Shown here one piece after another: positions 37,488 to 52,407 of a stretch of 64,000 bases of DNA. The stretch comes from Mytilus edulis. Lineage: Eukaryota. The stretch lies in assembly GCF_963676685.1 (NCBI RefSeq), contig NC_092346.1, positions 6,882,001 to 6,946,000 on the forward strand. The letters are read 5' to 3'. How positions within the stretch are numbered: the stretch's first letter is position 1; every line of letters starts with the position of its first letter. Under the pieces are notes generated by a model. It ran no database searches. It had not been told where the DNA came from and saw only the letters and a list, made by a program, of their open reading frames with translations. The translations under genes were made by a program, and so were the position numbers.

Positions 37488-39420
37488 GTAAACAGTTTGA
37501 AGGGACTTGGGGTACATCTTCTCAATATATTTTGTGGGATTTCTGGTTGGTAAGAGGTAGAAACCTTTGGATTTTTAAATTAATCATAATGTCAAATCAG
37601 GCAATTTAGTTTATATTGCGTCAGCTTTTTGAGACTGTTTATACCTTTATGGTTGAGTCTATGGATTTTTTTTGGAAAAAAAAGTTTGTTTCCAGTTTTT
37701 AGAGAAAAAAAAATAATTTGTTGTTTTCACCCTCAGCCGCCACTATATGTAGTGCTAAAATTAAAAGAAAAAATTGTTTTCAACTTTTTGCCAAAAGGTA
37801 GATTTTTTTTCGCCAGAGGCAGAAAAAAAATTTGTCTGGGAAAATAAACAAAGCCCCCCCCCCCCCCCTTCCGAAAAAATCAAATGGTTGCTGCCTTATG
37901 TTAACATTATTTTTACCCTCTGGTTGTTCAGTTAAATTTTCAGATATATATACTTGTTAGCAAGTGTTATGTCACAACCTAACCTTCAACAGTTTTGTAA
38001 TATTACAAAGTAATAACAACCTGTAAACAAATATTTGAAAATGAGTTGATTCATTGTATTGGTATTATCCACAAATACAAATTGGCATAAGACACAGTAT
38101 TACTAATCTGAGAGTAGTCAAAATTTATGAAAGCCCTCTCAAAGAATTAAAAATGATGCTCCCTAGACATATAACACACACGAAATCTAATAATAGTTAT
38201 TGACTGTATATATGACCATACAGGATTTTAATTAGATAGTAATAAAATTGAGAATGGAAATGTGGAATGTGTCAAAGAGACGACATTGACCATAGAACAG
38301 ACAACAGCAGAAGGTCACCAATAGGTCTTCAATGCAGCGAGAAACTCCCACACCTGGAGCGTCCTTCAGCTGGTCCCTTTACAAATATCTATACTAGTTC
38401 AGTGATAATGGACGTCATACTTAACTCCGAATTATACACAAGAAACTAAAATTTAAAATTATACAAGACTAACAAAGGCCAGAGGGTCCTGACTTGGGAC
38501 AGGCGCAAAAATGCATATTTATACATGTTTTAATGTATTGATAACAACACAAATGAAGTACTGAATAATACAGTATTCAAATATCTTAATCGTGTCAGTT
38601 AATTAACAGCCTTTCAGAAAAAGTTGATTAAATGGCTAACAAAAACACAAAAGACACAATGTACAGATCTGAACAAGGATTTGTATAGTGAGAAGGATTG
38701 GAATCTCGCGGTATCTCATTAGTTCTCGCGTATCGTGAGAAGTCGTAAACTCGCCACTTATACCATGATACTCGCTTGTATTGTAAATATCCGGTTTTAT
38801 CGCTTGGTTAACAACGTTATGAAAATACACATGGTAAGCTACGATCTTACGATCTTTTTACGATATTAGTTTTGTGTAGACTTACCGATAAAACAATTCT
38901 TATTTCTCTTAAATTACAAAGCGATAATTACCTAAATAGATCAAAAGGAAAAGTTGGCGTTTATAAAGTTTGTTTGTGAAATTTTCGTATTAAAATTAAA
39001 TTAAGTTTGTAAATTTGATATTCATCCCGGAAAAAGATAAAAAATATTGAGTTTTCCCCCTCATGTGACCGCAGTTTTGGTAGTCATTTATTATCTTCAT
39101 AATAATCATTTACTCAAAGAGGAAGATGAAATAATTATTTGATTGTCACAGCTTGTTGTTTGACTTTCTGTTTTTTTAAATAGTTCTTTGTTTTTTATTA
39201 ATTATGCAAGGAACTGTTTGTAATTGAAATATACTTTTGTGGTGATTAGATTAATTAGTGAAGAATATATATAATTAAATAAATTACAACCTTTAATCTC
39301 AAAACATAACATTTAATTTAAAAAAAAATCAAGATGATTAATTAAATGAAGTCTTTGATCTCAGTATCAGAACAAGCTTAGATATATTATAAAATGGAAT
39401 ATTTAGTTATCAACTTTCAG

Positions 39421-40683
39421 TTCAAATTATTATTCAATGTTACAACCATGTCAGATTTTTTATCCTGGGACCAAGATATTGACCTTGATCTTTTGTTAGG
39501 TGAATATACTGAGTATGATCCAGAACCCAGTGACAGTGATGAAGAATGTTACATTGCCAAAAAGAAAAAGTCTGAACCTGTACCAGATACATGTATTAAA
39601 CCTTCATACACTTGTCCTGTTTGCAAAAAGACTCTGAAAACAATTTCAGGCTTCCGTGGTCATGTCCAGAAACAACATGGACAGAATTTGAGAGCAACAG
39701 ACCATCGCACACATGCAGATAGTAAACTACCTAGCACAGTCCGTGACGCCTTAAATGAAAGTTCATTTGCTGAAATATTCCCTACAGCTTTGCAGTCCAG
39801 TTTGTCCAACATTGCTAATGATCCATTTACCATCAATGACAGCATAACAGACATTTGCAAATTTGTGAGCAATTCAGCAGTAGTGCAAGACATTTTGTTG
39901 AAATATTTTCAGCCGATATTTGTTGAAACTACAATCAACATATCTTCCTCATGTGACAAAGAGCAAATGTTTCGCCGTTTACACATAAGTAGAGTAAAGC
40001 CAGAATTGACAAACACTTTTCACTCGCATTGTCCATCTCACTCATTGAACCATACCAACTTATTCCTACAGATGGTACATGAGGATATTGTTGGTGAAAT
40101 TTTTAAAGTTCAAACAATGACAGCTGTTCAGAAATCAACATCAAATCAGGAAAAGTTAACAGAAAATGACCAAAGCATTCTGTATTATATTGCTGGTTAC
40201 ACCATTCGTGCCCTACAGAAGAGATACACCAGGTACTCTACTAAGAAGTTGTCCGTCATAAATAAATTTACAGACAATTCTTCAGGTGTTAACTTTGTGA
40301 AACAATATGACAAGTGGTATAAGACACAAGACCGTGGTGGCCTTCAGAAACCATCAGATTCCCTGTTCTTATTAATCCGTGAATTAGAGACAATTATTCG
40401 CAAAACAGTTGAACCTTCATATAGTGCTAGTTCGCTTCTTATTGATCCTTTAAAAGAAGCTATGATGGAAGGGTTCATGGTAAAACATTATTGTGACATT
40501 CTTATGCAAGGTGAAACTGCAGATATTGTGTCAGCTATAACTGAAGACATCATTCATTTGTTTTTAACCATCCGTGGCTTTGCTGTTACTCGTATAGAAC
40601 GCAATAAACTGACCAAGAAAGCAAAATCTCAACCCTCATCCAGTCTAAGACAAGCCTTAAAGGAGAAATCTTTAAACTGTTGA
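39421..40683 (+). CDS. Second transposon gene: C2H2 zinc finger plus P-transposase C-terminal-domain-like region
   Basis: Intact ORF; YTCPVCKKTLKTISGFRGHVQKQH (C2H2); LYYIAGYTIRAL...DRGGLQKPS...IRELE. Acceptor actttcag at 39420; a candidate upstream exon ends ATG|GTAAGC at 38833/38834 in frame; alternative start ATG at 39448. Confidence 0.82.
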   Translation, partial: FKLLFNVTTMSDFLSWDQDIDLDLLLGEYTEYDPEPSDSDEECYIAKKKKSEPVPDTCIKPSYTCPVCKKTLKTISGFRGHVQKQHGQNLRATDHRTHADSKLPSTVRDALNESSFAEIFPTALQSSLSNIANDPFTINDSITDICKFVSNSAVVQDILLKYFQPIFVETTINISSSCDKEQMFRRLHISRVKPELTNTFHSHCPSHSLNHTNLFLQMVHEDIVGEIFKVQTMTAVQKSTSNQEKLTENDQSILYYIAGYTIRALQKRYTRYSTKKLSVINKFTDNSSGVNFVKQYDKWYKTQDRGGLQKPSDSLFLLIRELETIIRKTVEPSYSASSLLIDPLKEAMMEGFMVKHYCDILMQGETADIVSAITEDIIHLFLTIRGFAVTRIERNKLTKKAKSQPSSSLRQALKEKSLNC

Positions 40684-42346
40684 CACTGTGACATTTAGTT
40701 TTGTTCTGTTCATACATGAAATATAATTATTTAAATTGTTTCCACATGATCTTGATGTAACTGTTGTATGAATATTTAAAAAGAGTGAAATGTGTAAATG
40801 TCTTTTTATTTATTGTCTTTCATAACACTGCTTTACAACTACTACTGAAAGAAAATTTAGCTGCAATCCAACTACAAAACTTATCTCATACGGCCTACAC
40901 TAAACAGGAACAATATAAGGTCTTCAACAAATGAGGGACGAAATGAATTTATTTGTATCCACGACAACCATCAATATTCTGTCAATATAAGATAATAAAT
41001 AAGAACAATTGTGGTACTTAAACCTAGCACATCAGGAGCAAAACAAAGAAATATGACAAATATAAATACAATTTTGGTGTCAGAACATTGAACTCTGGTG
41101 GATAGTTGTCTCATTGGCATTCATACAACTCTTATTTATATATCCTTGTCCCTTGGATTCTTGTCTCATTGGGAATCATGTATCATTTCTTATGACGACC
41201 ACAGCAAAACACAGGAACTCATGAACATGAATTGAACACTACTAAAGTATCAGGGACACATACAATTATATGTACATGTATGTAAATTTATCCAGGATAG
41301 CTTTTAATAATAGAGATTTGTTCTTGCTGAAAGTTTTATTTTCACACAACAAAATTCACAATATCAAATTATAAATCAAGCATGTGACAAACATTGAACG
41401 TTTTCTAACTCTCTCAATTTCTACACATTCATATAACAATGAAAAAATTTTGTACAAATATAGATTGGCGCAATAAAAAAAACAACATCATATATTACAC
41501 GTTATACACAATTTATTTCACATATTTTTTGTTTCAAAAACTACATACCTTAATTACCTTTTTAGACAGAACCATGCGAGAGAAAAAACACTTCACTAAT
41601 AAGCATGTTTAAAAAAAAAGTGTTGAATATTTGTTCCTGTATCTTTGAAATTAACATTGAAAAGTTAGAAATAATTAATTATCAAATGCATAAAGATTTA
41701 TGAATTACTATTTACTGTATTGAGTATTGTATCTGGTCCAAAAACAAAAAATCTTTCATATAAGGTAAATATTATGATGACAAACATGACAACATGAAAT
41801 ACATGTAGGAACACAACAAATAATCACAGACAGTGTTGTCTCAAATTTGCACACACAAGATACATGTACAACATTGTACAATGCATGTTAGTAAAAAATT
41901 TCCATACCCCACCAGACAAAGAAAAACTCTATCAAATGCAAGGACTCAACTAAAATTCAAAACTTCGTCTATTTTTATAACTTTTTAGTGAACCCAATTA
42001 CTGAGAACAAAAAAATAAATATTGAAAATTGCACCCTTACAAATGTTTTCTCAATTTCATAAGCATCAACCTGACCAATGGTTAACTAAGACTATTTTTA
42101 GTTTAAGTACTATAAAGGATACCTGCAATCATACGTGTACAATTGTACATACATGTATGTACCATATGCATGTGTACATTTCACCTTTCAAGTTTACATG
42201 AAAATGTTTACAAACTACCAAACACTCATATACTGCTATTAGAATTGCATAAATAATACATTATTTGGAAATAAATACATATGACAAGTATACATCATGT
42301 ACATGTAAATTAAACTTGTACAAAAAGACTTCCTGCATTATTTACA

Positions 42347-45019
42347 TTAAAATGTTTTGCGCTTTGGTAGCGAAGTGTTATCAATCACAAAGTTCCTGTC
42401 TCTCTGGTTACTGACATTTCCTCGTTTGGGTGCCAAAGCTTGAGCTCCAACCGCTCTCATGGAGGTCATCATATGACGAACATCATTCACTGTAGGGTTG
42501 TTATTGTCCCCAACCCTGTGTCGGTAGTGTCCAAAATGTTGCTCCAAGGGATCTTGGTTAAAGTGATGTGTGAGGACAAACTTTGCGCCAGATTCTAATA
42601 GAAATTTAACACAGTCTACAATTGAAAACACACTGATTTTAAAACCTGTCAATGTTTGATGACTCAATTGCATTCCTTTGCGTTGTTTCCTTGAAAAATT
42701 ACCAGCTCTTTGCATCACTGATTGTTCCCAGGAATCAAAGTACTTAATAAAGTCTACTCTCAACCACTGTAATCTTTCATCATTGACTGTTGTGTATGGA
42801 TCAAGGTCAGGATTTCTCTTATTTCTACCTTCATATAAGTTTCTTACATTCAAACAATCAAAAAATTTGTTCATAATTCTGATGAAATTAACTGTCTCGG
42901 TTACATTATCTCCATACATCATTTCAAGGGCATTCGCTACTGTGGAGCTCAAAACTTGTGCTGCAATGTTGACTTTCATGCAACCGTAGGTTGTCATGTC
43001 AAGGTGACTTCTTGTCAATTTAGGACACGGACTGTACAGTGATAGTTCACAATGGTCTTCAAACAATTTCAACAGATGCATCCACGAAATATCTTTTCCA
43101 TCTTTCCACATTTTTCTGGTGTTTTTGTGGGAATATGAATTGCTGAAACAGTTTCTAGTTGTTTTCACAAGATGGGGAACATCTGAGATGAAATAAAGTT
43201 TTCTTTCGTCATCGGCATAAGGATTGGTTGTGTAATGAATAAATTCATTCACCTGTCCATGAATGTTGAAGAACTTCCTATTTGCAGATGCGCCATCACA
43301 AGTCAGAAAGAGTACTTTAAGTTGAGCAAAGCCGGTCTCTAAAATGCGAATAGCCTTCCAAATAATAGGATAAAGATAATCAGCAGTAATACTTAAGGTA
43401 GCAAAGCCTGCTAAAGGGAATTTCAAGTCTGTTGCAACACCTCTCACCATTAACACAAGCATGTATTTGGCAATGTCTGCATCTGTTTCTGTAGAACTTG
43501 TATCTTTCATACTTCTTTCAAAGTTCATTATCTGGTTTCCGACCTTATCTAGATTGCAATAACCAATTAGTTCGCCACTATGTTTATCATACACCAAGTC
43601 TGATTTAACCTTGATTTCGTCGAACAAAAGTCCTACATAATTCTTCCAAGGATCAACTGTACTGTACATATCTCTTTTCGAAGCCTCACTTTTCAGTTCT
43701 TTCACTACATCTGGCAAAAAACCATTGTCACTTTTAGTATAATGCGAATAATCGAATAATGTCCTTGAACTTGGAAGAGTAATGAAACCCGAATCTCTTA
43801 AAGCCTCGTAGGCAGCACTTGATTTGTGACGCAAGTACAGACACCATCTTAGTATCATTGGGTGCCATCGCATACCCTTCAATGACTTCACATTCGTGCT
43901 CTTTTGTTGTTCTGACCAGACAAGGCGTTGATAAGAATTGGCATCAGGAAAGGCTTTCATTATTTCAGTTGTACATGCTGCCATTGTATCTTGCATTTCA
44001 AGTGTCTGACTGAAGTCTAATGTTACACCTTTACTGCTAACCTCACGTTGAAACTTCCGTTGAGTTTTGTCAATTTCACTCTGTAGGGTTGTTATTCTGT
44101 CTTTCTGCTGGTGAATTTTTGTAATTAGTTCAGTACGGGACATCTTGGTATGTCCTATAGTGCTGTGTAAATAGTTTGGTATGTTTTCCTTACTTTTTCT
44201 CTCTTTTTCTTCTCGTCTGTGTTTTCTACTTATCAGCACTCTTCTTAATTGTGTACAGGGTGAACATCTGTTTCCCTGCACAAGTAGTAAACAGTTCATG
44301 CTTCTTACAGTTGATGAATAGGAAATGGTACCTTTCACTGCTTCAAAGTCACCTTCTCGAAAACCTTGGCTACTTGCAGAACCTTCTGCGCTCTCGACAG
44401 ATGTGCCCACTGGTATAAAAGACATTAAATCTGCCTCGAAATTTCCTGTACACACAGAATAACTTTGTAATTTCATAAGTAATGTTTGGATGTGTTTAAC
44501 ACTGTCAAAAATTCTTGGTAAACCGATCCATAGGTCATGGTCTTAGCTGAGCTGGATTCTGTGTACAAATACTTTGGCAAAAAAATCTCTATTTATCATC
44601 ACATTTAATTTAACAGATATTCTTTCAGCGGACGGATATAAAAGCATTATCTTGATTGAATCACTGGTTGTATCTAAAACATATGGTGAACTGATGCAAC
44701 CACTCTGGACAACATCTTGCTTAAGTTTATCGAATGGGTCTGTATATGATGATGTCACACATTCGGTTTCCTCTATCATGTCTATAGCTACTTCTTCTTG
44801 ATAGGAGGTACATTCTATGTCCTCTACAGGCTCAGCAGTGTACAAAGTAAAGTCAGGGTCAATCCTTTCTCCACGCACTTCTACTTCTTCTTTTAGACAT
44901 AATTGCACTATGTCCTCGTTTGGCATACTATAAGAATGGTCATTGTGCAAGTCAGTAGATTGGACTTTTTTACGCTTTCTCTGTGAAGGAACATCCCTCC
45001 TTTTCCTTAACTTTGGCAT
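42347..45019 (-). CDS. P-element/THAP9-like DDE transposase, about 890 codons, with one in-frame TAA at 44545-44543 (probably disabled)
   Basis: ORFs 44543-45079 and 42347-44476 share a frame (…HRIQLS*DHDLWIGLPRIFD…MKLQ). Motifs: RWHPMILRWCLYL..KSSAAYEALR..LPSSRTL, LLFDEIKV (D), TCDGASANR (D), DVPHLVKTTRN (GTP-binding insertion), FNQDPLEQHFG (E). Acceptor ttaatttgcag|A precedes ATG at 45019. Confidence 0.88.
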
Positions 45020-45847
45020 TCTGCAAATTAATAAAAACAGAATTGTTAGTCTAATTTTCACAGCCAATTGGGTTGGCATATATATAGCATGTAAAGTTAT
45101 GGTTAAAAAGGTTAATATTGATTTTATTTTTAAACCTAACTAATTTGCCTAATGAGGTTTCCCTTAGTTAGGGTGTTCTTTTTACATTTAGTCTTGAGCA
45201 ATATTCTGACTTCAACAATGAAAATTTAAGAAAATCTTAAGTTGTTGTTTGTTTATCATGTTTATGGGTTAAATAATTGTTTTTCGTTATTTAATATTTA
45301 AGGCCGTTAGATTTTTGTTTGAATTGTTTTACATTGTCATTTCGGGGCCTTTTATAGCTGACTATGTGGTATGGGCTTTGCTCATTAGTGAAGAACGTAC
45401 GGTTACCTATAGTTGTTAATTTATGTGTCATTTTGGTCTCTTGTGGAGAGTTGTTTCTTTGGCAAACATACCACATCTTCTTTTTTTATATTTAGGGTAG
45501 GTTAGGCTATTATTATAGAGACTAAAAAGTAGGGTTGGCAGGGTAATTGGAACCACACATGATTTTTTTTATTTGGCCCTTAAGTTCTACACATGTCAAT
45601 TATGTTGTTTGCCTAAAAAAATACTGACCTACCAACCCAACCCTGTCAGGCCTGTAAGGCATAGGTAGGCAACAACTAACATTTTTTTTCTGAAGGTCAA
45701 CTTTCAAAATTAACAATAAAGAAACATATAACTACATCCTTAATGAAGGGGGATAGGACTTTTATCTTTTTAAACTGTGGATTGACCCTTTCAGGATGTC
45801 AGAATTTGTTTTTTAAATGCTGGCCCTCAAGATTTAGTGTTTTTAAG

Positions 45848-45998
45848 CATAGGCGTATCCCGGGCCCCCCCTTTCGTGGGAAAAATTTGGTTGATTATAT
45901 AGGGAATCATTGAAGCATGACTGGAGCCCCCCCCCCCCCCCCCCCACTTAAGTCAGTCAGCGGGCCCCCCCTTAGGAAAAGTTTTGGATCCGCCACTG
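45848..45998. mobile_element. 151-bp GC-rich MITE nested in the P element
   Basis: CATAGGCGTATCC...GGATCCGCCACTG; 5-bp TSD TTAAG; related partial copy at about 63010-63128. Confidence 0.65.
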
Positions 45999-48900
45999 TT
46001 AAGCCCAGGATTTCTGGATCAGGACCCCTCCTACCCCCCACCTTTTGTTTTTAGATTAAAAGTGCAAACCCTAGCACACTTACATATTACATTATTACAT
46101 TGTATGGTTGTTTGACCTAATAATAATTTAAAATTCTTATTCAGCTTCATGACTTTTATGCCTATTTGGTCAAATTCTCATGCATTACAATTAGAATTTC
46201 ATGTAATCTGATAATTTCTTTTATTCTTTACCGGGTTCATTAATGAATTTCAGTGTAATATTACCTCCTTCTTTTATCATGTATGACTATTCTTTATAAT
46301 TTGGCACCCCATTGTTTCCTATTTTACCCAAGCATAACTTTGATCACTAATTATTATTTCAATTCTCAAATTTATTAACCCCATTTAGACCCTCTTTTGT
46401 AATAGGGGAAAACAAAGGTGGTAATACCCCTATATGTACAGCATAATACCATCTGTTGCTTTATTAATACACAGGGTATTATTCAAAAGATACATGGAAA
46501 TCCTGGGTACAGATAAAGTGTCTCAGGTAAATTGTAAGGCACATGTGCCTCAGGAACATAACATGTGTTTGACAAATTTCTTATTTGATTTTACTGTGGA
46601 CAAGATACACTAATCCATATAAACTTAAAAAAAAGGATAAAAAAAATGTAACAACCAGACATGCTAAATGAACTTAATATTAATACAAATATAAATGACA
46701 CTTTTCAATGCATTTACAAAAACTAGTCTCGTAACCTCAGTTCTATCAGGAGCAGATCCAGCTATTTTTAAAAGGGGGTTACAACTTGAGTCCCATGTCT
46801 TGATCAGTCCAAAAGAGGTCAATGTCTATATAGAAATGACTCCTTTATTTATGAAGTAAACTGCTGTTTTTTACATATGCACAATGATATATACATGAGT
46901 AACATGATATGTGAGATTTGGGCTTCAGAATTAAGAATTACTTCTGGTAGGCTTGTTTAAACTATATCATGATCAATACCTTGTCTTGTCATATAGTGGT
47001 AATACAAAACTTTTAAAGTTTTGCCATGTTCCATGGGTAATTGAAAACTTCATGGAATAACTTACAATGCATGAATCCATGATGCAGTAATTTATACATC
47101 TATATGGGTTGACAATTATTTACTGACAATTTGACAAATAGCACATTTAAAAAGATTGCTAGAAAAATATTTCATCTTTCTTTTTCCTCATGCTAACAGA
47201 CATGACAGAGCATAATATTAAAGTATAAATTCTATATACATGTACGCCCGGAATATATACTGAGTGTGTCCATCTTAAAATAATAGCTTAGTTGAGTACT
47301 AAAACCACTAATTATTATAGTATTTATATTGATAAATAAAGATTTCAGTCACAACTTCAGGATGTTAGATAAGTATACAGTACATCCAAAAAGGAGCAGT
47401 TCCTGTCTTTTATGTTGTTAACTTTTTATCCATAAGTGGATTGTTTTGTCATGATGGGATATTTTTCTTTGCCGATTTCAAAGGTAAAATTGAGAATGGA
47501 AATGGGGAATGTGCCAAAGAGACAACAACCGGACCATAGAAAAAAACAACAGCAGAAGGTCACCAACAGGTCTTCAATGTAGCGAAAAATTCCCGCACCC
47601 AGAGGCGTCCTTCTACTGGCCCCTAAACAAATATATACTAGTTCAGTGATAATGAACGCCAATCTAATTTCCACATTGTACCCAAGAAACTAAAATTAAA
47701 ATAATGCAAGACTAACAAAGGCCAGAGGCTCCTGACTTTGGACAGGCGCAAAAATGCGGCGGGGTTAAACACGTTTGTGAGATCTCAACCCTCCCCCTAT
47801 ACCTCTAGCCAATGTAGAAAAGTAAACGCATAACAATACGCACATTAAAATTCAGTTATATACATAAAAATTGTCTTGTCTCTTATTCATACACTGGACT
47901 GAACACAAAAAAAAAAACCATTGACCATTGAATCATGAAAATGAGGTTAAGATCAGATGAATATAAATTCCATGTGTTAAGTAGTCGGTGTACTGTACTT
48001 AAGCATAATAGTAAGAAAGGAAAATATTTACCTGGCTATTATCTACACAAACTTTTTCTATCTTCAGAGGGCTGTATATACTACGTAGGCTCAAGAAATC
48101 TTGAAATATGAAATCTGAAATTGAAATATGCAATTACTTCATGTACTTAATGGAAATGTTACAGAAAACAGTTTTTGTTTGAACCTGTCCTAAGTCAGGA
48201 ATATGATGTACAAGTGTACAGTAGTTGTCGTTTGTTTATGTAATTTATATGTGTTTCTCGTTTTTCATATAGATAAGACCGTTGGTTTCCCCGTTTGAAT
48301 GGTTTTAAACTTGTAATTTACACATTTGGTTATCCCAAAGTAGTTTCTAAATTTATTCAGACAATTAAAGTTATAACTGTAAACTTGTAAACAGATGGAT
48401 CAACTTACATACATACATGCAAACTCTTAACATATACAAAAACATGTACATACTGAACACGTAAATCAAAACATAGCAATTGAACAGCAACTTGAGACAA
48501 ACTTAAAATTTGCAGACTGTCCTTTCTGTTTTTTACATCAGCTTGTGATTTTGTTTAGTTTTTCACCATAATGAATTTCAGACTTAACGAATGTTTGCCA
48601 GACTAACAAGCCATAAAAGCAGTTTTTCTATGTCTCTTAATTTATTTGGCGGTCCAAGGATCTGTATAGCGAGAAAAATCCTTGGTTCGTTAGATTTTTT
48701 TAAGATGAATATTTTAGACTAGGTTTAAGTCGTAGCACTAGCTTGTTCTGGTAGAAAATTGAAGATTGTGATGTTCGGATGAACGTGCATTTTCCAATTA
48801 TTCAATAATGGTATAGAGGCATTTTCCAATTATTCAATGAAGGAATAAAGGGGGGGGTGTTCAAATGCCAGCTGCGCTTCAGCACAAACATGTGCACCTT

Positions 48901-49066
48901 TCTTTTATCATTTCAACACTGGATTATACCTTCAGCTTGTTGTAGTCTCTTTCTGATTAATATTTTTATTTATATACATGTTCTTGAATAATTTTATTTA
49001 GAGTTGGACCAAGGATTTGTATAAAATGTCGTATAAAATGTAAATAACAACAGACAAAACATGAGC

Positions 49067-49217
49067 CAGTGGCGGATCCAGGGAGAGGGTTCCGAGGGTT
49101 GGATTCCCCCATTTCTTTGGACGATCAATGCATTTGAATGGGGACATATAGTTGGAACCCCCCCCCCCCTGTCCCGGGTTAGGAACCCCCTTTTTTAAAT
49201 GGCTGGATTCGCCACTG
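49067..49217. mobile_element. 151-bp GC-rich MITE nested in the P element
   Basis: TIR CAGTGGCGGATCCA/TGGATTCGCCACTG; 5-bp TSD TGAGC. Confidence 0.7.
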
Positions 49218-50295
49218 TGAGCGGTCTCTGATTTCAGAGTTCTTTTACGGACATTCTGATTCACCCATCTCCTACTAGTAAGTAAGTCAGTAAGTAATGA
49301 CTTTATTTAAAAAGGGTGACTCAATTAGCTTTCGCTTATCTACCTTGAGGCCCTCACAAAGAACAAACAGTACAAATATTACGAAGCTTTCTAACATATT
49401 ATGATACTCCTGAAACCTTTGTAACAGATCATTAATAATATAATTCTAGTAGGAAGAAATTCTCACCATAGTTATAGTAAACACAAAAAGAAGCAATATG
49501 AAAAAGGGTAATTATGTCATAATATGACTGCTTACAAGTGCTTCTCTCCGACCTCTAGGGGACATACATTTGTACATGTATGCACAATAGGCCGTTTTAA
49601 AAGATATAATTCTGTTGAGAAATACAGTACCTTTGTTGTTAACATCCAATTTAACACAGAAGCAAGTATAGATGTAAACATTTCCATCACGTTTTCTCAG
49701 AAAATTCGAGATCAAGGAAGTTAATTTATGTTAATTTGATCCCGCCCATAATGACAACATTTGGATGCATCTGGTGACCGTAGTGGTATTTTAAAACGAT
49801 GATAATAGCACACGTTATCAATTTACAAGCACTTTTTTTTTTAAAGAACACCAAACAAACTATACTTAAATGAAATAATTACGTTTCATAGCTGAAATCG
49901 ACAAAATGAGATACTTTATTGATTTTATCTAAGCCCATCCTACTTTGCACTGACGCGGAGCCATTTTGGACAGGTCGGCCTGAAACATTCATCAAAATAG
50001 CAACAACCAAAGCACCTTTCACCATATTATTTGAACTGTTCACGTATCAAACACATTTATTTCATATTATTAAAGTTTTTTCACATAATTCCTCATTTTG
50101 AAGGAGGAGATTGAACTCAAAGATGGGGTTTGGACAGCCTTTTTGGGCGGGATTATGGCGATGATCAGGAGAAAATATGCATAGTCAATTTAGCTGTAAA
50201 TAATGCGTATTGTAACGATGTTAATTGATTTCTTAATCTGAACTGACATAATATTACATATAAAAGTATCATTATCATGCAAATATATATATTAT

Positions 50296-50430
50296 ACTTA
50301 CAATAGGCTGACTTTAATCTTGATGCGACACGAATTTAACTGTTAATGGATGACATAAAACGACAAACGAGATGCATCACGGTTAATCTCGTCAAAATCT
50401 CGTATACGCAGCTTTTTATATACAGCCAAT
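50296..50430 (-). promoter_or_regulatory. Candidate transposase promoter and first non-coding exon just inside the right TIR
   Basis: Minus strand reads ATTGG, then TATATAAAAAG (about 50422-50411), then donor GTAAGT at 50301-50296. Confidence 0.4.
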
Positions 50431-52407
50431 GCAAACTGCTCGCGAGATTCCAATCCTTCTCACTATACAAATCCTTGATCTGAAGTACTTGCAGTTACTT
50501 AATGCTAGTTCAAATCCAATAACATCTTATACAAAACAAATGTTTCTAAGACAAATAAATCAATCAGTATACCACCAAAATCTTTACAAGGCATACATGT
50601 ACATGTCCTTTAGACAACCTTCTCATAACCTTTACCTCAGTTCAAAGATCAGTAATCCACATAAGTTTTGTTGATAAGCTCTGATACTTAGACAAAAAAA
50701 AATGAACCAGTCAATATTGATTTTGTATGTAATAATAATATAGTAATACAACAACGATATTTGATTTTGAATCAATAAGAAATATGTAAGTTGTTAGTTA
50801 TATTGATATCTTAGTTCTGATGAAGGAAAATTCAGAACAGCCGTATAATGGTATGACCATGTTTTTCTTCGTTGTCGTCAGAAGCCATTTAGCTTCCTGA
50901 CAATATCTGAAGTCTAAAAGTGTAAGGATTTTTGAGGAATTGTACCACAAGCTTTCATACTACAAATAAAGATTGGTATTGATTTTGGGGTTTATGCCCT
51001 GGCTGTGTTGGAAAATAGGGACAAACAGGGTGAAGAAAGCATTCATCTTGTTTCAGAGCAGTTACTTGAGTATAACTTATGTATTCAAATCTATAAAACT
51101 GTACCACAATGTTCCATTCCAAAATGGACGTGTGGGATTGACTTTTGTGGGAAATGTCCTAACCGTCTAGGGTGTATGGTTACGGGTACCTATTTCAATG
51201 TGATTTAATTCAAAGTCTTGAATTTTTGGTGTTCTTCAATATGGCGAATCTAGCTGTATTTAGATTGTTGTTGTGGCCCCATTTAAAAAAATGGTCAAAC
51301 TTGAGGTCGAATGGGTTCAAAATTAAACTTTGCTGGATTTGATAAAAAATGGAATTATTGGAGTTCTTTGGATGTGCTGATTCTTACCGTGCTAAGATTT
51401 TTTTTATCTTGTCTGTGAAGAAAATCAAGATAATCAACATAGGTATTGCTTTTCTTGAAACGACAACAGGGTAAAAAGTTGTTAAGTTTTCTGCTAAAGT
51501 TGGTTTGATAGGAACCAGTTACAATAGGCAACCATATTTTCTATGAAGTTAACATTAAGATCAGAAAGTCCAAAATTGATTTCACAAAAATTGAAATCTT
51601 GGTTTTTTTTCGTATGCTGAAAAATAAGCATGTATTTATCTTTTTTGATATTGGCCCAGTTTTCGAATTGGTACAAATCGGTGTCTAAAATTAAACTTAG
51701 TTTGATTTCAACACAAAAATTAAAAGTATGGGAATCTTTGATATGCTGAATTTAATAACTTCTATGTTGGATTTTGGGCCCTGTTATCAAATTGTTGCAC
51801 ATTGAGATCCAAGCTGAAACTTTGTTTGATTTCATAAAATATAGATTTTTTTTTTGTGTGATATGCTGAATCTAACCATGCTAACCATATATTTAGATAT
51901 TGCCATTATTGGACAATAATAGGTTAATATCCTATTTCAAATATTTTAGTTCTTCGACCATATTCATTCTGTGTCAGAAACATATATATATATATATATG
52001 CTGCATCAAATATACTCACTATCCTAATTCAGAGCTGTATCTAGCTTGAATGTTGTGTCCATACTTGCCCCAACTGTTCAGGATTAAACATCTGTGGTCG
52101 TATCAAGCTGTGTCATGAGAAGCATTTATTTAAACCTATTACAAATATATTGTCACTGTTCGGTCTATGAGAAAACTGATGCATACTAAATGCATATTAC
52201 AAACATTCCAAGAAGAAATTTGAAAAGAAATAAAAACTAATTGACAACAATATATTCCAAGAATAAAAATGAGATTTGTGAATTTCAACATAGTGCACCA
52301 TTGATAATGACAGATATGTTAAACCCTTAAAAGTGTAGACCAATCAGTTATATTGATCAATTAATCGTTTATTTATTTTTATTTATATTCCAAAATTCGT
52401 CTTTCAG

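What the first reader, a model, noticed from the sequence alone, without database searches (positions are those of the whole stretch)
38674..50477. Apparent split, two-gene P element: catalytic core and zinc finger plus C-terminal domain on separate convergent genes
Seen: one pair of perfect 37-bp TIRs with a 7-bp TSD encloses two tail-to-tail genes, each starting near a TIR. The transposase ends about 60 aa after the catalytic Glu (NQDPLEQHFG), and I found no THAP finger in it. The partner ORF has a C2H2 finger and LYYIAGYTIRAL...DRGGLQKPS...IRELE. Known: canonical P/THAP9 transposases are single chains with an N-terminal THAP domain and a C-terminal domain; from recall, the Drosophila domain contains EYIAGYVIKKL...HGGLIKPS...LKELE. 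Inference: the C-terminal domain, and perhaps sequence-specific DNA binding, moved to a second subunit. The convergent layout parallels ProtoRAG RAG1L/RAG2L, and two-protein systems are known in PIF/Harbinger and Kolobok. I do not know of this being described for P elements, but I cannot search.
Basis: partly seen in the sequence, partly recalled or inferred. Interest (0 to 1): 0.9.

Follow-up and report, generated by a model that had tools for sequence, protein, structure and literature searches.

The report
Two-gene (split) P-element transposon in mussel
This is a recently mobile P-type "jumping gene" of the blue mussel whose transposase lacks the usual C-terminal domain; that domain sits on a separate neighbouring gene, and the pairing recurs in other mussel P-element families.

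Summary
Perfect 37-bp TIRs (38674-38710 and 50441-50477) with a 7-bp TSD (ATCTGAA) enclose two convergent genes.

- **Transposase (minus strand, 42347-45079).** It is a P-superfamily enzyme with RNase H-N, GTP-binding insertion and RNase H-C domains. It ends 64 aa after the catalytic Glu and has no THAP and no C-terminal domain (CTD). This copy carries one nonsense codon at 44543-44545; an intact 910-aa ORF exists on another chromosome.
- **Partner (plus strand, 39448-40683, 411 aa).** It has a C2H2 finger plus helical domains.
  - Its AlphaFold model (residues 253-409) has the Drosophila P transposase CTD (6p5a_B) as top structural match among 48,161 PDB chains: Z 10.2, 116 of 118 residues aligned, 22% identity.
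  - A family profile finds the same chain as best PDB sequence hit (E 9e-4), aligning YIAGY, GGLxxPS and ELE.
- **Linkage.** The gene pair recurs in at least seven diverged families in this Mytilus edulis genome. Both protein families occur in other molluscs and a hemichordate. The 120 best transposase relatives all lack a CTD.

Physical interaction is untested (complex prediction gave no verdict).

The parts
38667..38673 (.). left target-site duplication ATCTGAA
   Evidence: identical to 50478-50484
38674..38710 (+). left 37-bp terminal inverted repeat
   Evidence: perfect complement of the right TIR; 129 genomic occurrences against 0 for the control
39448..40683 (+). partner gene, 411 aa from M19 (the ORF opens at 39394); intact
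   Evidence: dN/dS 0.15-0.33 between element lineages; low RNA read cover
39607..39678 (+). single C2H2 zinc finger of the partner (aa 72-95 of the 429-aa ORF)
   Evidence: (C74, C77, H90 and H95 nearly invariant)
40150..40620 (+). P-transposase C-terminal-domain fold of the partner (aa 253-409)
   Evidence: 6p5a_B, Z 10.2, 116 of 118 aligned; E 9.3e-4; PF12596
40684..42346 (.). spacer between the two convergent stop codons; holds a ~30-bp motif (41098-41126) shared with many unrelated transcripts
42347..45079 (-). P-superfamily transposase gene, 910 codons, inactivated here by one nonsense codon
44543..44545 (-). premature stop (codon 179), the only frame-breaking difference from the intact C10 copy
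   Evidence: 30 substitutions, no indels
44090..44722 (-). conserved N-terminal domain of the transposase (aa 120-330): beta-rich module, four invariant Cys, long helix; not THAP
   Evidence: (pLDDT 94.2)
43262..43726 (-). RNase H-like catalytic domain, N-terminal part (PF21787)
42821..43174 (-). GTP-binding insertion domain (PF21788)
42488..42568 (-). RNase H-like domain, C-terminal part with the catalytic Glu (PF21789)
45080..50440 (.). 5.4 kb of family-specific non-coding DNA upstream of the transposase, with a nested 373-bp high-copy repeat at 47485-47857
50441..50477 (-). right 37-bp terminal inverted repeat
50478..50484 (.). right target-site duplication ATCTGAA

Best explanation
The feature is an 11.8-kb cut-and-paste DNA transposon of the P superfamily in Mytilus edulis. 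Its transposition machinery is encoded by two convergent genes inside one pair of TIRs.

**Gene 1 (minus strand)** encodes the catalytic chain. [quoted passage not shown] It has no C-terminal domain.

**Gene 2 (plus strand)** encodes a 411-aa protein. It has an acidic N-terminus, one C2H2 finger, a helical middle domain, and a domain homologous in sequence and fold to the C-terminal domain (CTD) of Drosophila P transposase.

**Shown here:** the anatomy, the homology, the conserved linkage of the two genes, recent mobility, and purifying selection on the partner.

**Inferred:** the partner joins the transposase-DNA complex in trans and occupies the position the CTD holds in the Drosophila strand-transfer complex. 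There the CTD sits between the RNase H domain of one subunit and the GTP-binding domain of the other, touching transposon and target DNA (PMC7776569). The partner's zinc finger would add DNA or chromatin contacts.

This window's copy cannot make full-length transposase because of one nonsense codon. It could still be mobilised by intact copies elsewhere in the genome.
For: **Element anatomy and mobility**
- TIR and TSD, with four independent 7-bp TSDs.
- Copies are 96-100% identical, which indicates recent mobility.

**Transposase**
- Pfam PF21787, PF21788 and PF21789.
- 6p5a_A at E 2.7e-15, aligned through the catalytic Glu.
- No CTD and no THAP.
- None of the 120 best relatives carries PF12596 or PF22824, and only one carries THAP. 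They come from bivalves, gastropods, echinoderms, hemichordates and amphioxus.

**Partner is homologous to the CTD**
- VIA-align rank 1 of 48,161 chains is 6p5a_B: Z 10.2, 116 of 118 aligned, 22% identity.
- The family profile's best PDB sequence hit is 6p5a_B at E 9.3e-4, with YIAGY, GGLxxPS and ELE aligned.
- The only PF12596 hits in the genome are in partner paralogues, at 24 and 23.8 bits against a cut-off of 22.6.
- Of 73 family members, 8 hit PF12596 at E<0.1.
- Precomputed Pfam THAP9_C (PF22824) is listed on 20 of 28 homologues.

**Linkage**
- The partner-plus / transposase-minus pairing recurs in at least seven diverged families of this genome. Partner identity falls from 51% to 24% as transposase identity falls from 75% to 36%.
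- The C6 family has both genes inside TIRs 9.8 kb apart.
- Homologues in other taxa share contig lengths or have adjacent RefSeq gene numbers.

**Partner is a real, selected, standalone gene**
- 2,159 clusters at E<=1e-3. All but one of the best 150 are 92-493 aa; the exception (1,153 aa) matches through seven copies of the zinc-finger region. No transposase fusion appears among them.
- dN/dS is 0.15-0.33 between element lineages.
- Low RNA read cover in 3 of 4 RNA runs.
Against: - No direct evidence that the two proteins bind. The complex prediction scored 0.23 against a mark of 0.34, which the tool rates as no verdict.
- A 2026 preprint (10.64898/2026.08.31.747927) reports that CTD-truncated Drosophila P transposase and human THAP9 still excise and integrate. 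The partner may therefore be dispensable or regulatory rather than a required subunit.
- Foldseek against the PDB found nothing.
- Z 10 is within the range that helical domains can reach by chance (note).
- The window protein itself scores only 14.6 bits on PF12596, below the 22.6 cut-off.
- The precomputed PF22824 annotation was not reproduced by my own hmmscan or by the genome scan.
- Almost no transposase RNA was seen, and no transcript ends or splice joints could be defined.
Confidence: 0.75

Rival explanations
1. The anatomy is the same, but the partner is a regulator, for example a repressor or an integration-site modulator, rather than a subunit needed for catalysis. It could act like the truncated 66-kDa and KP repressors of Drosophila P, or like the CTD of THAP9, whose removal increases integration.
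For: - CTD-less Drosophila P transposase and THAP9 remain active, and CTD removal favours integration in THAP9 (preprint 10.64898/2026.08.31.747927).
- Two mobilised deletion derivatives (C8 5.2 kb, C12 6.4 kb) keep an intact partner ORF but have lost the transposase.
- The partner is transcribed at a low level where the transposase is not.
Against: - In the Drosophila strand-transfer complex the CTD makes many contacts with transposon and target DNA (PMC7776569).
- The partner gene is kept with the transposase across families down to 24% identity. That argues for a function that benefits the element.
- Regulator and subunit roles are not mutually exclusive.
Confidence: 0.2
2. The partner is a passenger: a captured or coincidentally nested host zinc-finger gene with no role in transposition, and its resemblance to the P CTD is a chance match between helical bundles.
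For: - Foldseek found no match.
- Helical models often reach Z 10 or more by chance (note).
- The window protein is below the Pfam cut-off.
Against: - Structure and sequence searches independently rank the same 135-aa chain first, in the same register.
- The transposase lacks exactly this domain.
- Linkage and orientation are conserved in at least seven diverged families, and the two proteins diverge in parallel.
- The partner has no TIRs or TSD of its own. Other inverted repeats in the region are 78-82% matches of 21-27 nt.
Confidence: 0.03
3. It is a single ancestral transposase gene whose 3' exon was inverted, or an assembly artefact, so the two ORFs are really one gene.
For: - The convergent layout puts the two 3' ends together.
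- One copy pair on C10 lies in a palindromic context.
Against: - The partner has its own conserved N-terminus (MSDFLSWD), zinc finger and middle domain, conserved from bivalves to a hemichordate and an annelid.
- The same layout is seen in independent copies on five chromosomes and in diverged families.
- RefSeq models in related species call two separate genes.
Confidence: 0.02

Closest known systems
Drosophila P element transposase (and human or zebrafish THAP9)
   Same: [quoted passage not shown]
- An alpha-helical C-terminal domain with YIAGY, GGLxxPS and ELE motifs and the same fold.
- TIR-bounded cut-and-paste element with a 7-8-bp TSD.
   Different: - The CTD is not part of the transposase chain. 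It sits on a separate, convergently transcribed gene, fused to a C2H2 finger and an extra helical domain.
- There is no THAP domain; a four-Cys N-terminal domain stands in its place.
- TSD is 7 bp rather than 8 bp, and TIRs are 37 bp rather than 31 bp.
- The element is 11.8 kb rather than 2.9 kb.
Galileo and 1360, other P-superfamily elements of Drosophila
   Same: P-superfamily transposase. Galileo also has a 7-bp TSD (PMC4168063).
   Different: Those encode a single THAP-bearing transposase, and Galileo has very long TIRs. No second gene is described in the papers found.
PIF/Harbinger (transposase plus Myb-like DNA-binding protein) and ProtoRAG (convergent RAG1L/RAG2L)
   Same: Two genes inside one pair of TIRs. 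The second protein carries a DNA-binding-type domain and is presumed to act with the catalytic chain. The layout is convergent, as in ProtoRAG.
   Different: The superfamilies are unrelated. In those elements the second protein is not a detached domain of the canonical single-chain transposase. Here it is homologous to a domain that other P transposases carry in cis.
Pfam families Tnp_P_element_C (PF12596) and THAP9_C (PF22824)
   Same: Partner paralogues reach the PF12596 cut-off. Precomputed annotation lists PF22824 on 20 of 28 homologues.
   Different: - Only about 45 of the 107 PF12596 positions match.
- The window protein is below the cut-off.
- The domain is in a standalone C2H2 protein rather than at the end of a transposase.

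Membership tests
P superfamily transposon (transposase gene) | [quoted passage not shown] | tested here: met
   PF21787 at 7.8e-21, PF21788 at 1.2e-19, PF21789 at 2.4e-6, all over their cut-offs. 6p5a_A at E 2.7e-15, aligned through the catalytic Glu.
P superfamily transposon (transposase gene) | Terminal inverted repeats with 7-8-bp target-site duplication | tested here: met
   Perfect 37-bp TIRs. 7-bp TSD in 4 of 5 copies examined. Galileo also has 7 bp (PMC4168063).
P superfamily transposon (transposase gene) | N-terminal THAP zinc-finger DNA-binding domain | tested here: not met
   No PF05485 at E<=1. No C2CH or AVPTIF signature in six frames. No THAP structure among the top 50 fold matches of the N-terminal domain. 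Only 1 of 120 relatives has THAP.
P superfamily transposon (transposase gene) | C-terminal domain on the same polypeptide | tested here: not met
   The protein ends 64 aa after the catalytic Glu. No PF12596 or PF22824 in it or in its 120 best relatives.
P superfamily transposon (transposase gene) | GTP-dependent transposition | not testable with these tools
   Biochemical property. Only the presence of the insertion domain was shown.
P transposase C-terminal domain (PF12596 / PF22824) for the partner | Score over the Pfam gathering threshold | tested here: inconclusive
   - Window protein: 14.6 bits against 22.6.
- Paralogues: 24.0 and 23.8 bits in the genome scan, 22.5 bits in hmmscan.
- 8 of 73 family members hit at E<0.1.
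- PF22824 is listed in precomputed annotation but was not reproduced.
P transposase C-terminal domain (PF12596 / PF22824) for the partner | Same fold as the solved Drosophila CTD (6p5a chain B, residues 617-734) | tested here: met
   Rank 1 of 48,161 chains: Z 10.2, rmsd 2.7 A, 116 of 118 residues, 22% identity; next hit Z 6.7. The model has pLDDT 80-90 over this part.
P transposase C-terminal domain (PF12596 / PF22824) for the partner | Conserved sequence motifs in the same order and register | tested here: met
   The family profile against PDB sequences gives 6p5a_B at E 9.3e-4. YIAGY, GGLxxPS and ELE are aligned, and the register agrees with the structural alignment to within one residue.
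Two-protein transposons (PIF/Harbinger type), analogy only | The second protein binds the transposase and is needed for transposition | tested here: inconclusive
   The complex prediction gave no verdict.

The most novel reading that the evidence does not exclude
The partner is an obligatory trans-acting subunit, so this clade of P elements works as a heteromeric transposase, as RAG1/RAG2 and Harbinger do. The clade occurs in molluscs, echinoderms, hemichordates and amphioxus for the transposase, and in molluscs, an annelid and a hemichordate for the partner. On this reading the two-gene form is ancient, and possibly the ancestral state from which single-chain P and THAP9 arose by gene fusion.
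Probability: 0.35. Interest if true: 0.85.

Novelty: new variant of a known kind. Interest (0 to 1): 0.68.

Why it matters
The C-terminal domain of P transposase and human THAP9 is still described as functionally uncharacterised (2026 preprint 10.64898/2026.08.31.747927).

A natural lineage in which this domain has been a separate protein for a long time would help in three ways:
- It is a ready-made experiment on what the domain does, because the domain can be added, withheld or titrated without truncating the enzyme.
- It would add the P superfamily to the short list of eukaryotic cut-and-paste transposons that use two proteins.
- It would give a case for studying fission or fusion of transposase domains, which bears on how THAP9 was domesticated.

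The family looks recently active in Mytilus: copies are near-identical, TSDs are clean, and intact ORFs exist. Functional tests with natural sequences are therefore realistic.

Tried and rejected
- **Foldseek against the PDB**, with the partner model and with the transposase N-terminal model: no match at E<=0.001.
- **Narrow 18-sequence profile and a single paralogue against PDB sequences:** only C2H2 hits or nothing. The wider 73-sequence profile was needed.
- **PF22824 (THAP9_C) scan of the genome:** no hit.
- **ESM Atlas**, for the partner and for the transposase N-terminal domain: no usable hit.
- **Complex prediction**, transposase 400-910 with partner 115-429: score 0.23 and 0.02 against a mark of 0.34. 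The tool rates this as no verdict, so it is neither support nor evidence against binding.
Cross-species linkage rests on shared contig lengths and adjacent RefSeq gene numbers.
- **Metagenome scan for partner loci:** one 2.4-kb contig, uninformative.
- **RNA reads (4 runs, 6-18% of each read):** low cover on the partner, almost none on the transposase, no joints. This is too thin to define transcripts.
- **THAP hidden elsewhere in the element:** rejected by a six-frame motif scan.
- **Kolobok affinity:** considered and rejected, because of the GTP-binding insertion domain and the 7-bp TSD.
- **The PHD-finger ORF beside a second P-like family:** tested as a possible partner relative and is not related.
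- **Earlier findings of this scan near this place:** one unrelated note only.


Full report
**1. The observation**

The inverted-repeat search finds one long pair in the region. Reading the ends shows a perfect 37-bp TIR at 38674-38710 and 50441-50477, flanked by the direct repeat ATCTGAA.

The 37-mer occurs 129 times in the genome at up to three mismatches. The reversed control occurs 0 times.

Two convergent ORFs lie inside: plus-strand 39394-40683 and minus-strand 42347-44476.

Protein names and contig lengths returned by the protein search identify the genome as Mytilus edulis.

**2. Copies and mobility**

The genome holds several near-identical copies (96-100%):
- this one on C3;
- one on C11 (14 kb);
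- two on C10 (12 kb);
- a partial one on C1;
- two internal-deletion derivatives on C8 (5.2 kb) and C12 (6.4 kb).

Four of the five copies examined have clean 7-bp TSDs of different sequence. The family has therefore transposed recently, and 7 bp is its TSD length.

The two deletion derivatives share a left breakpoint. Both keep an intact partner ORF and have lost the transposase.

**3. The transposase**

In the C10 copies the 709-aa ORF and the 178-aa ORF upstream form one 910-aa frame. The window copy differs from it by 30 substitutions and no indels. One substitution creates a stop at codon 179, at 44543-44545.

*Catalytic core.* Pfam finds the three P-transposase core families over their cut-offs and nothing else. 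The Drosophila enzyme (6p5a_A) matches at E 2.7e-15 through the catalytic Glu.

*No CTD.* The chain ends 64 residues after that Glu, where the Drosophila protein goes on through a linker to its C-terminal domain at 617-734.

*No THAP.* No THAP domain is found by Pfam. No C2CH or AVPTIF signature occurs in any frame of the whole element.

*A different N-terminal domain.* Residues 120-330 form a domain that AlphaFold predicts with pLDDT 94. It is beta-rich, is followed by a long helix, and has four cysteines invariant in 36 relatives: C210, C263, C272 and C275. It has no convincing match in the PDB; the best Z is 5.9, to RWD/UBC-like folds. I read it as a candidate zinc-binding DNA-binding and dimerisation module that replaces THAP. 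This is inference.

*Relatives.* The 120 best relatives come from bivalves, gastropods, echinoderms, hemichordates and amphioxus. They share 39-98% identity over the core. None carries PF12596 or PF22824, and only one carries THAP.

**4. The partner**

Relatives start at MSDFLSWD, so the protein is probably 411 aa from 39448.

*Family size.* A profile of 18 homologues finds 2,159 clusters at E<=1e-3 among 1.84 billion representatives. All but one of the best 150 are 92-493 aa. The exception (1,153 aa) matches through seven copies of the zinc-finger region and is not a transposase fusion.

*Distribution.* Named members come from Mytilus, Pecten, Argopecten, Tegillarca, Mya, Haliotis, Patella, Littorina, Batillaria, the annelid Owenia and the hemichordate Ptychodera. 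All are annotated as uncharacterised.

*Model.* The AlphaFold model (mean pLDDT 71.7, and 80-90 over most of residues 120-410) shows a C2H2 finger and two helical domains.

**5. Is the partner the missing domain?**

Four tests were run.

- **Structure.** Aligning the model to each of 48,161 PDB representatives puts 6p5a chain B first. That chain is the Drosophila CTD, deposited as its own chain covering residues 617-734. Z is 10.2, rmsd 2.7 A, 116 of 118 residues aligned, 22% identity. The next chain has Z 6.7.
- **Sequence.** A 73-sequence family profile searched against all PDB sequences returns the same chain as best hit, at E 9.3e-4. It aligns VLyYIaGy with MEYIAGYV and RGGLkyPsddf..LvrelE with HGGLIKPSEKF..LKELE. 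The register agrees with the structural alignment to within one residue.
- **Pfam genome scan.** Scanning the whole 1.37-Gb genome with Pfam Tnp_P_element_C gives exactly two hits. Both are over the curated cut-off and both lie inside partner paralogues. One paralogue scores E 1.8e-4 in hmmscan.
- **Precomputed annotation.** THAP9_C (PF22824) is listed on 20 of 28 homologues.

Weak points:
- Foldseek saw nothing.
- The window protein is below the PF12596 cut-off.
- I could not reproduce the PF22824 hits.
- Z 10 alone would not be decisive for a helical domain.

The agreement of independent methods on one small chain, which is exactly the domain the neighbouring transposase lacks, makes chance very unlikely.

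**6. Linkage**

The partner-plus / transposase-minus pairing recurs in diverged families of the same genome at:
- C6:47.38 Mb
- C10:54.94 Mb
- C13:50.18 Mb
- C11:48.48 Mb
- C9:63.95 Mb
- C1:22.53 Mb
- C11:12.85 Mb

Partner identity to the window falls from 51% to 24% as transposase identity falls from 75% to 36%.

The C6 element has the same TIR with one mismatch. Its two TIRs lie 9.8 kb apart around both genes.

In one family (C9:18.79 Mb and C8:80.88 Mb) the transposase lies between the zinc-finger part and the CTD part of the partner.

Outside this genome, pairs of homologues share contig lengths. Examples are an 11,931-bp contig for P0009 and P0168, and chromosomes of Argopecten, Haliotis cracherodii and Ptychodera. 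In M. galloprovincialis the pair has adjacent gene numbers, LOC143055246 and LOC143055247.

**7. Selection and expression**

Between the full-length lineage and the deletion-derivative lineage the partner ORF shows dN/dS of 0.15-0.33, from 30-41 differences.

In four RNA runs of a Mytilus species the partner ORF has low read cover in three. The transposase has almost none, and no splice joints were seen. Only 6-18% of each run was read, so this does not define transcripts.

**8. Mechanism**

*Shown:* a TIR/TSD element with a CTD-less, THAP-less P transposase and a separately encoded CTD homologue. Their association is conserved and both are under selection.

*Inferred:* the partner docks on the transposase-DNA complex where the CTD sits in the Drosophila structure. 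That position is between the RNase H domain of one subunit and the GTP-binding domain of the other, touching transposon and target DNA, with a basic C-terminal helix pointing at the target (PMC7776569). The partner also ends in a basic helix (RNKLTKKAKS...).

A complex prediction gave no verdict.

A 2026 preprint reports that CTD-less Drosophila P transposase and THAP9 still cut and integrate, and that loss of the CTD raises integration by THAP9. A regulatory role for the partner is therefore a serious alternative. The partner-only derivatives fit either reading.

**9. Comparison and novelty**

The element belongs to the P superfamily by its catalytic core, insertion domain, TIRs and TSD. It fails two features of the canonical architecture: THAP, and the CTD in cis.

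It works like two-protein transposons (PIF/Harbinger, ProtoRAG) in layout only.

Five literature searches found papers on P, THAP9, Galileo, KolobokP and bivalve transposons. None describes a P element with a separate CTD gene. Repbase and Dfam could not be consulted, so an earlier database record cannot be excluded.

I class it as a new variant of a known kind.

**10. Verdict**

- the transposase ORF extends upstream to 45079 and carries a nonsense codon;
- it does not start near a TIR.

The interpretation of a split P transposase is supported at the level of homology and gene linkage. The functional claim that the partner acts as a subunit remains to be tested.

This scan's earlier notes hold nothing on this element.

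Noticed in passing
L041+L042 (G000:C10:60586900-60599400) and G000:C10:60631236-60643278: The intact C10 copy has no direct TSD. Its 187-bp left flank is the reverse complement of its right flank (186 of 187 bases). A twin copy lies inverted 32 kb away. This could be a palindrome, an aberrant transposition event or an assembly artefact.
   Followed up: partly
L046 (G000:C9:18790500-18800499) and L047 (G000:C8:80882500-80892499): A diverged family in which the transposase (minus strand) lies between the zinc-finger part and the CTD part of the partner (plus strand). The transposase may be nested in the partner's intron, or the partner may itself be split.
   Followed up: partly
L051 (G000:C6:89045000-89050000), with at least 10 identical ORF copies elsewhere: A second P-like family. 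Its 796-aa transposase (only PF21787 detected) also ends soon after the catalytic Glu. A convergent 239-aa PHD-finger ORF lies beside it. That ORF is unrelated to the partner family.
   Followed up: partly
genome-wide, e.g. G000:C9:59490037-59494244 and G000:C10:6083965-6088191: Many pairs of the same TIR (variant with A at position 17) lie 4.0-4.8 kb apart. This suggests an abundant non-autonomous subfamily. Its internal content was not examined.
   Followed up: no
window 47485-47857: A nested 373-bp repeat, 96-97% identical to dozens of copies across all chromosomes (a MITE- or SINE-like insertion). It is only partly present in the C10 copies.
   Followed up: partly
window 41098-41126: A ~30-bp motif in the intergenic spacer is carried by many unrelated transcripts. 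RNA reads pile up there with unlike sequence on both sides.
   Followed up: no
window 44090-44722 (transposase aa 120-330): A very confidently predicted domain (pLDDT 94) with four invariant cysteines and no clear PDB or Pfam match. It is a possible new DNA-binding module in P-like transposases.
   Followed up: partly
partner homologues P0001-P0026: The precomputed annotation lists Pfam PF22824 (THAP9_C). Neither the local hmmscan nor the genome scan with PF22824.1 reproduces it, which may be a model-version difference.
   Followed up: partly
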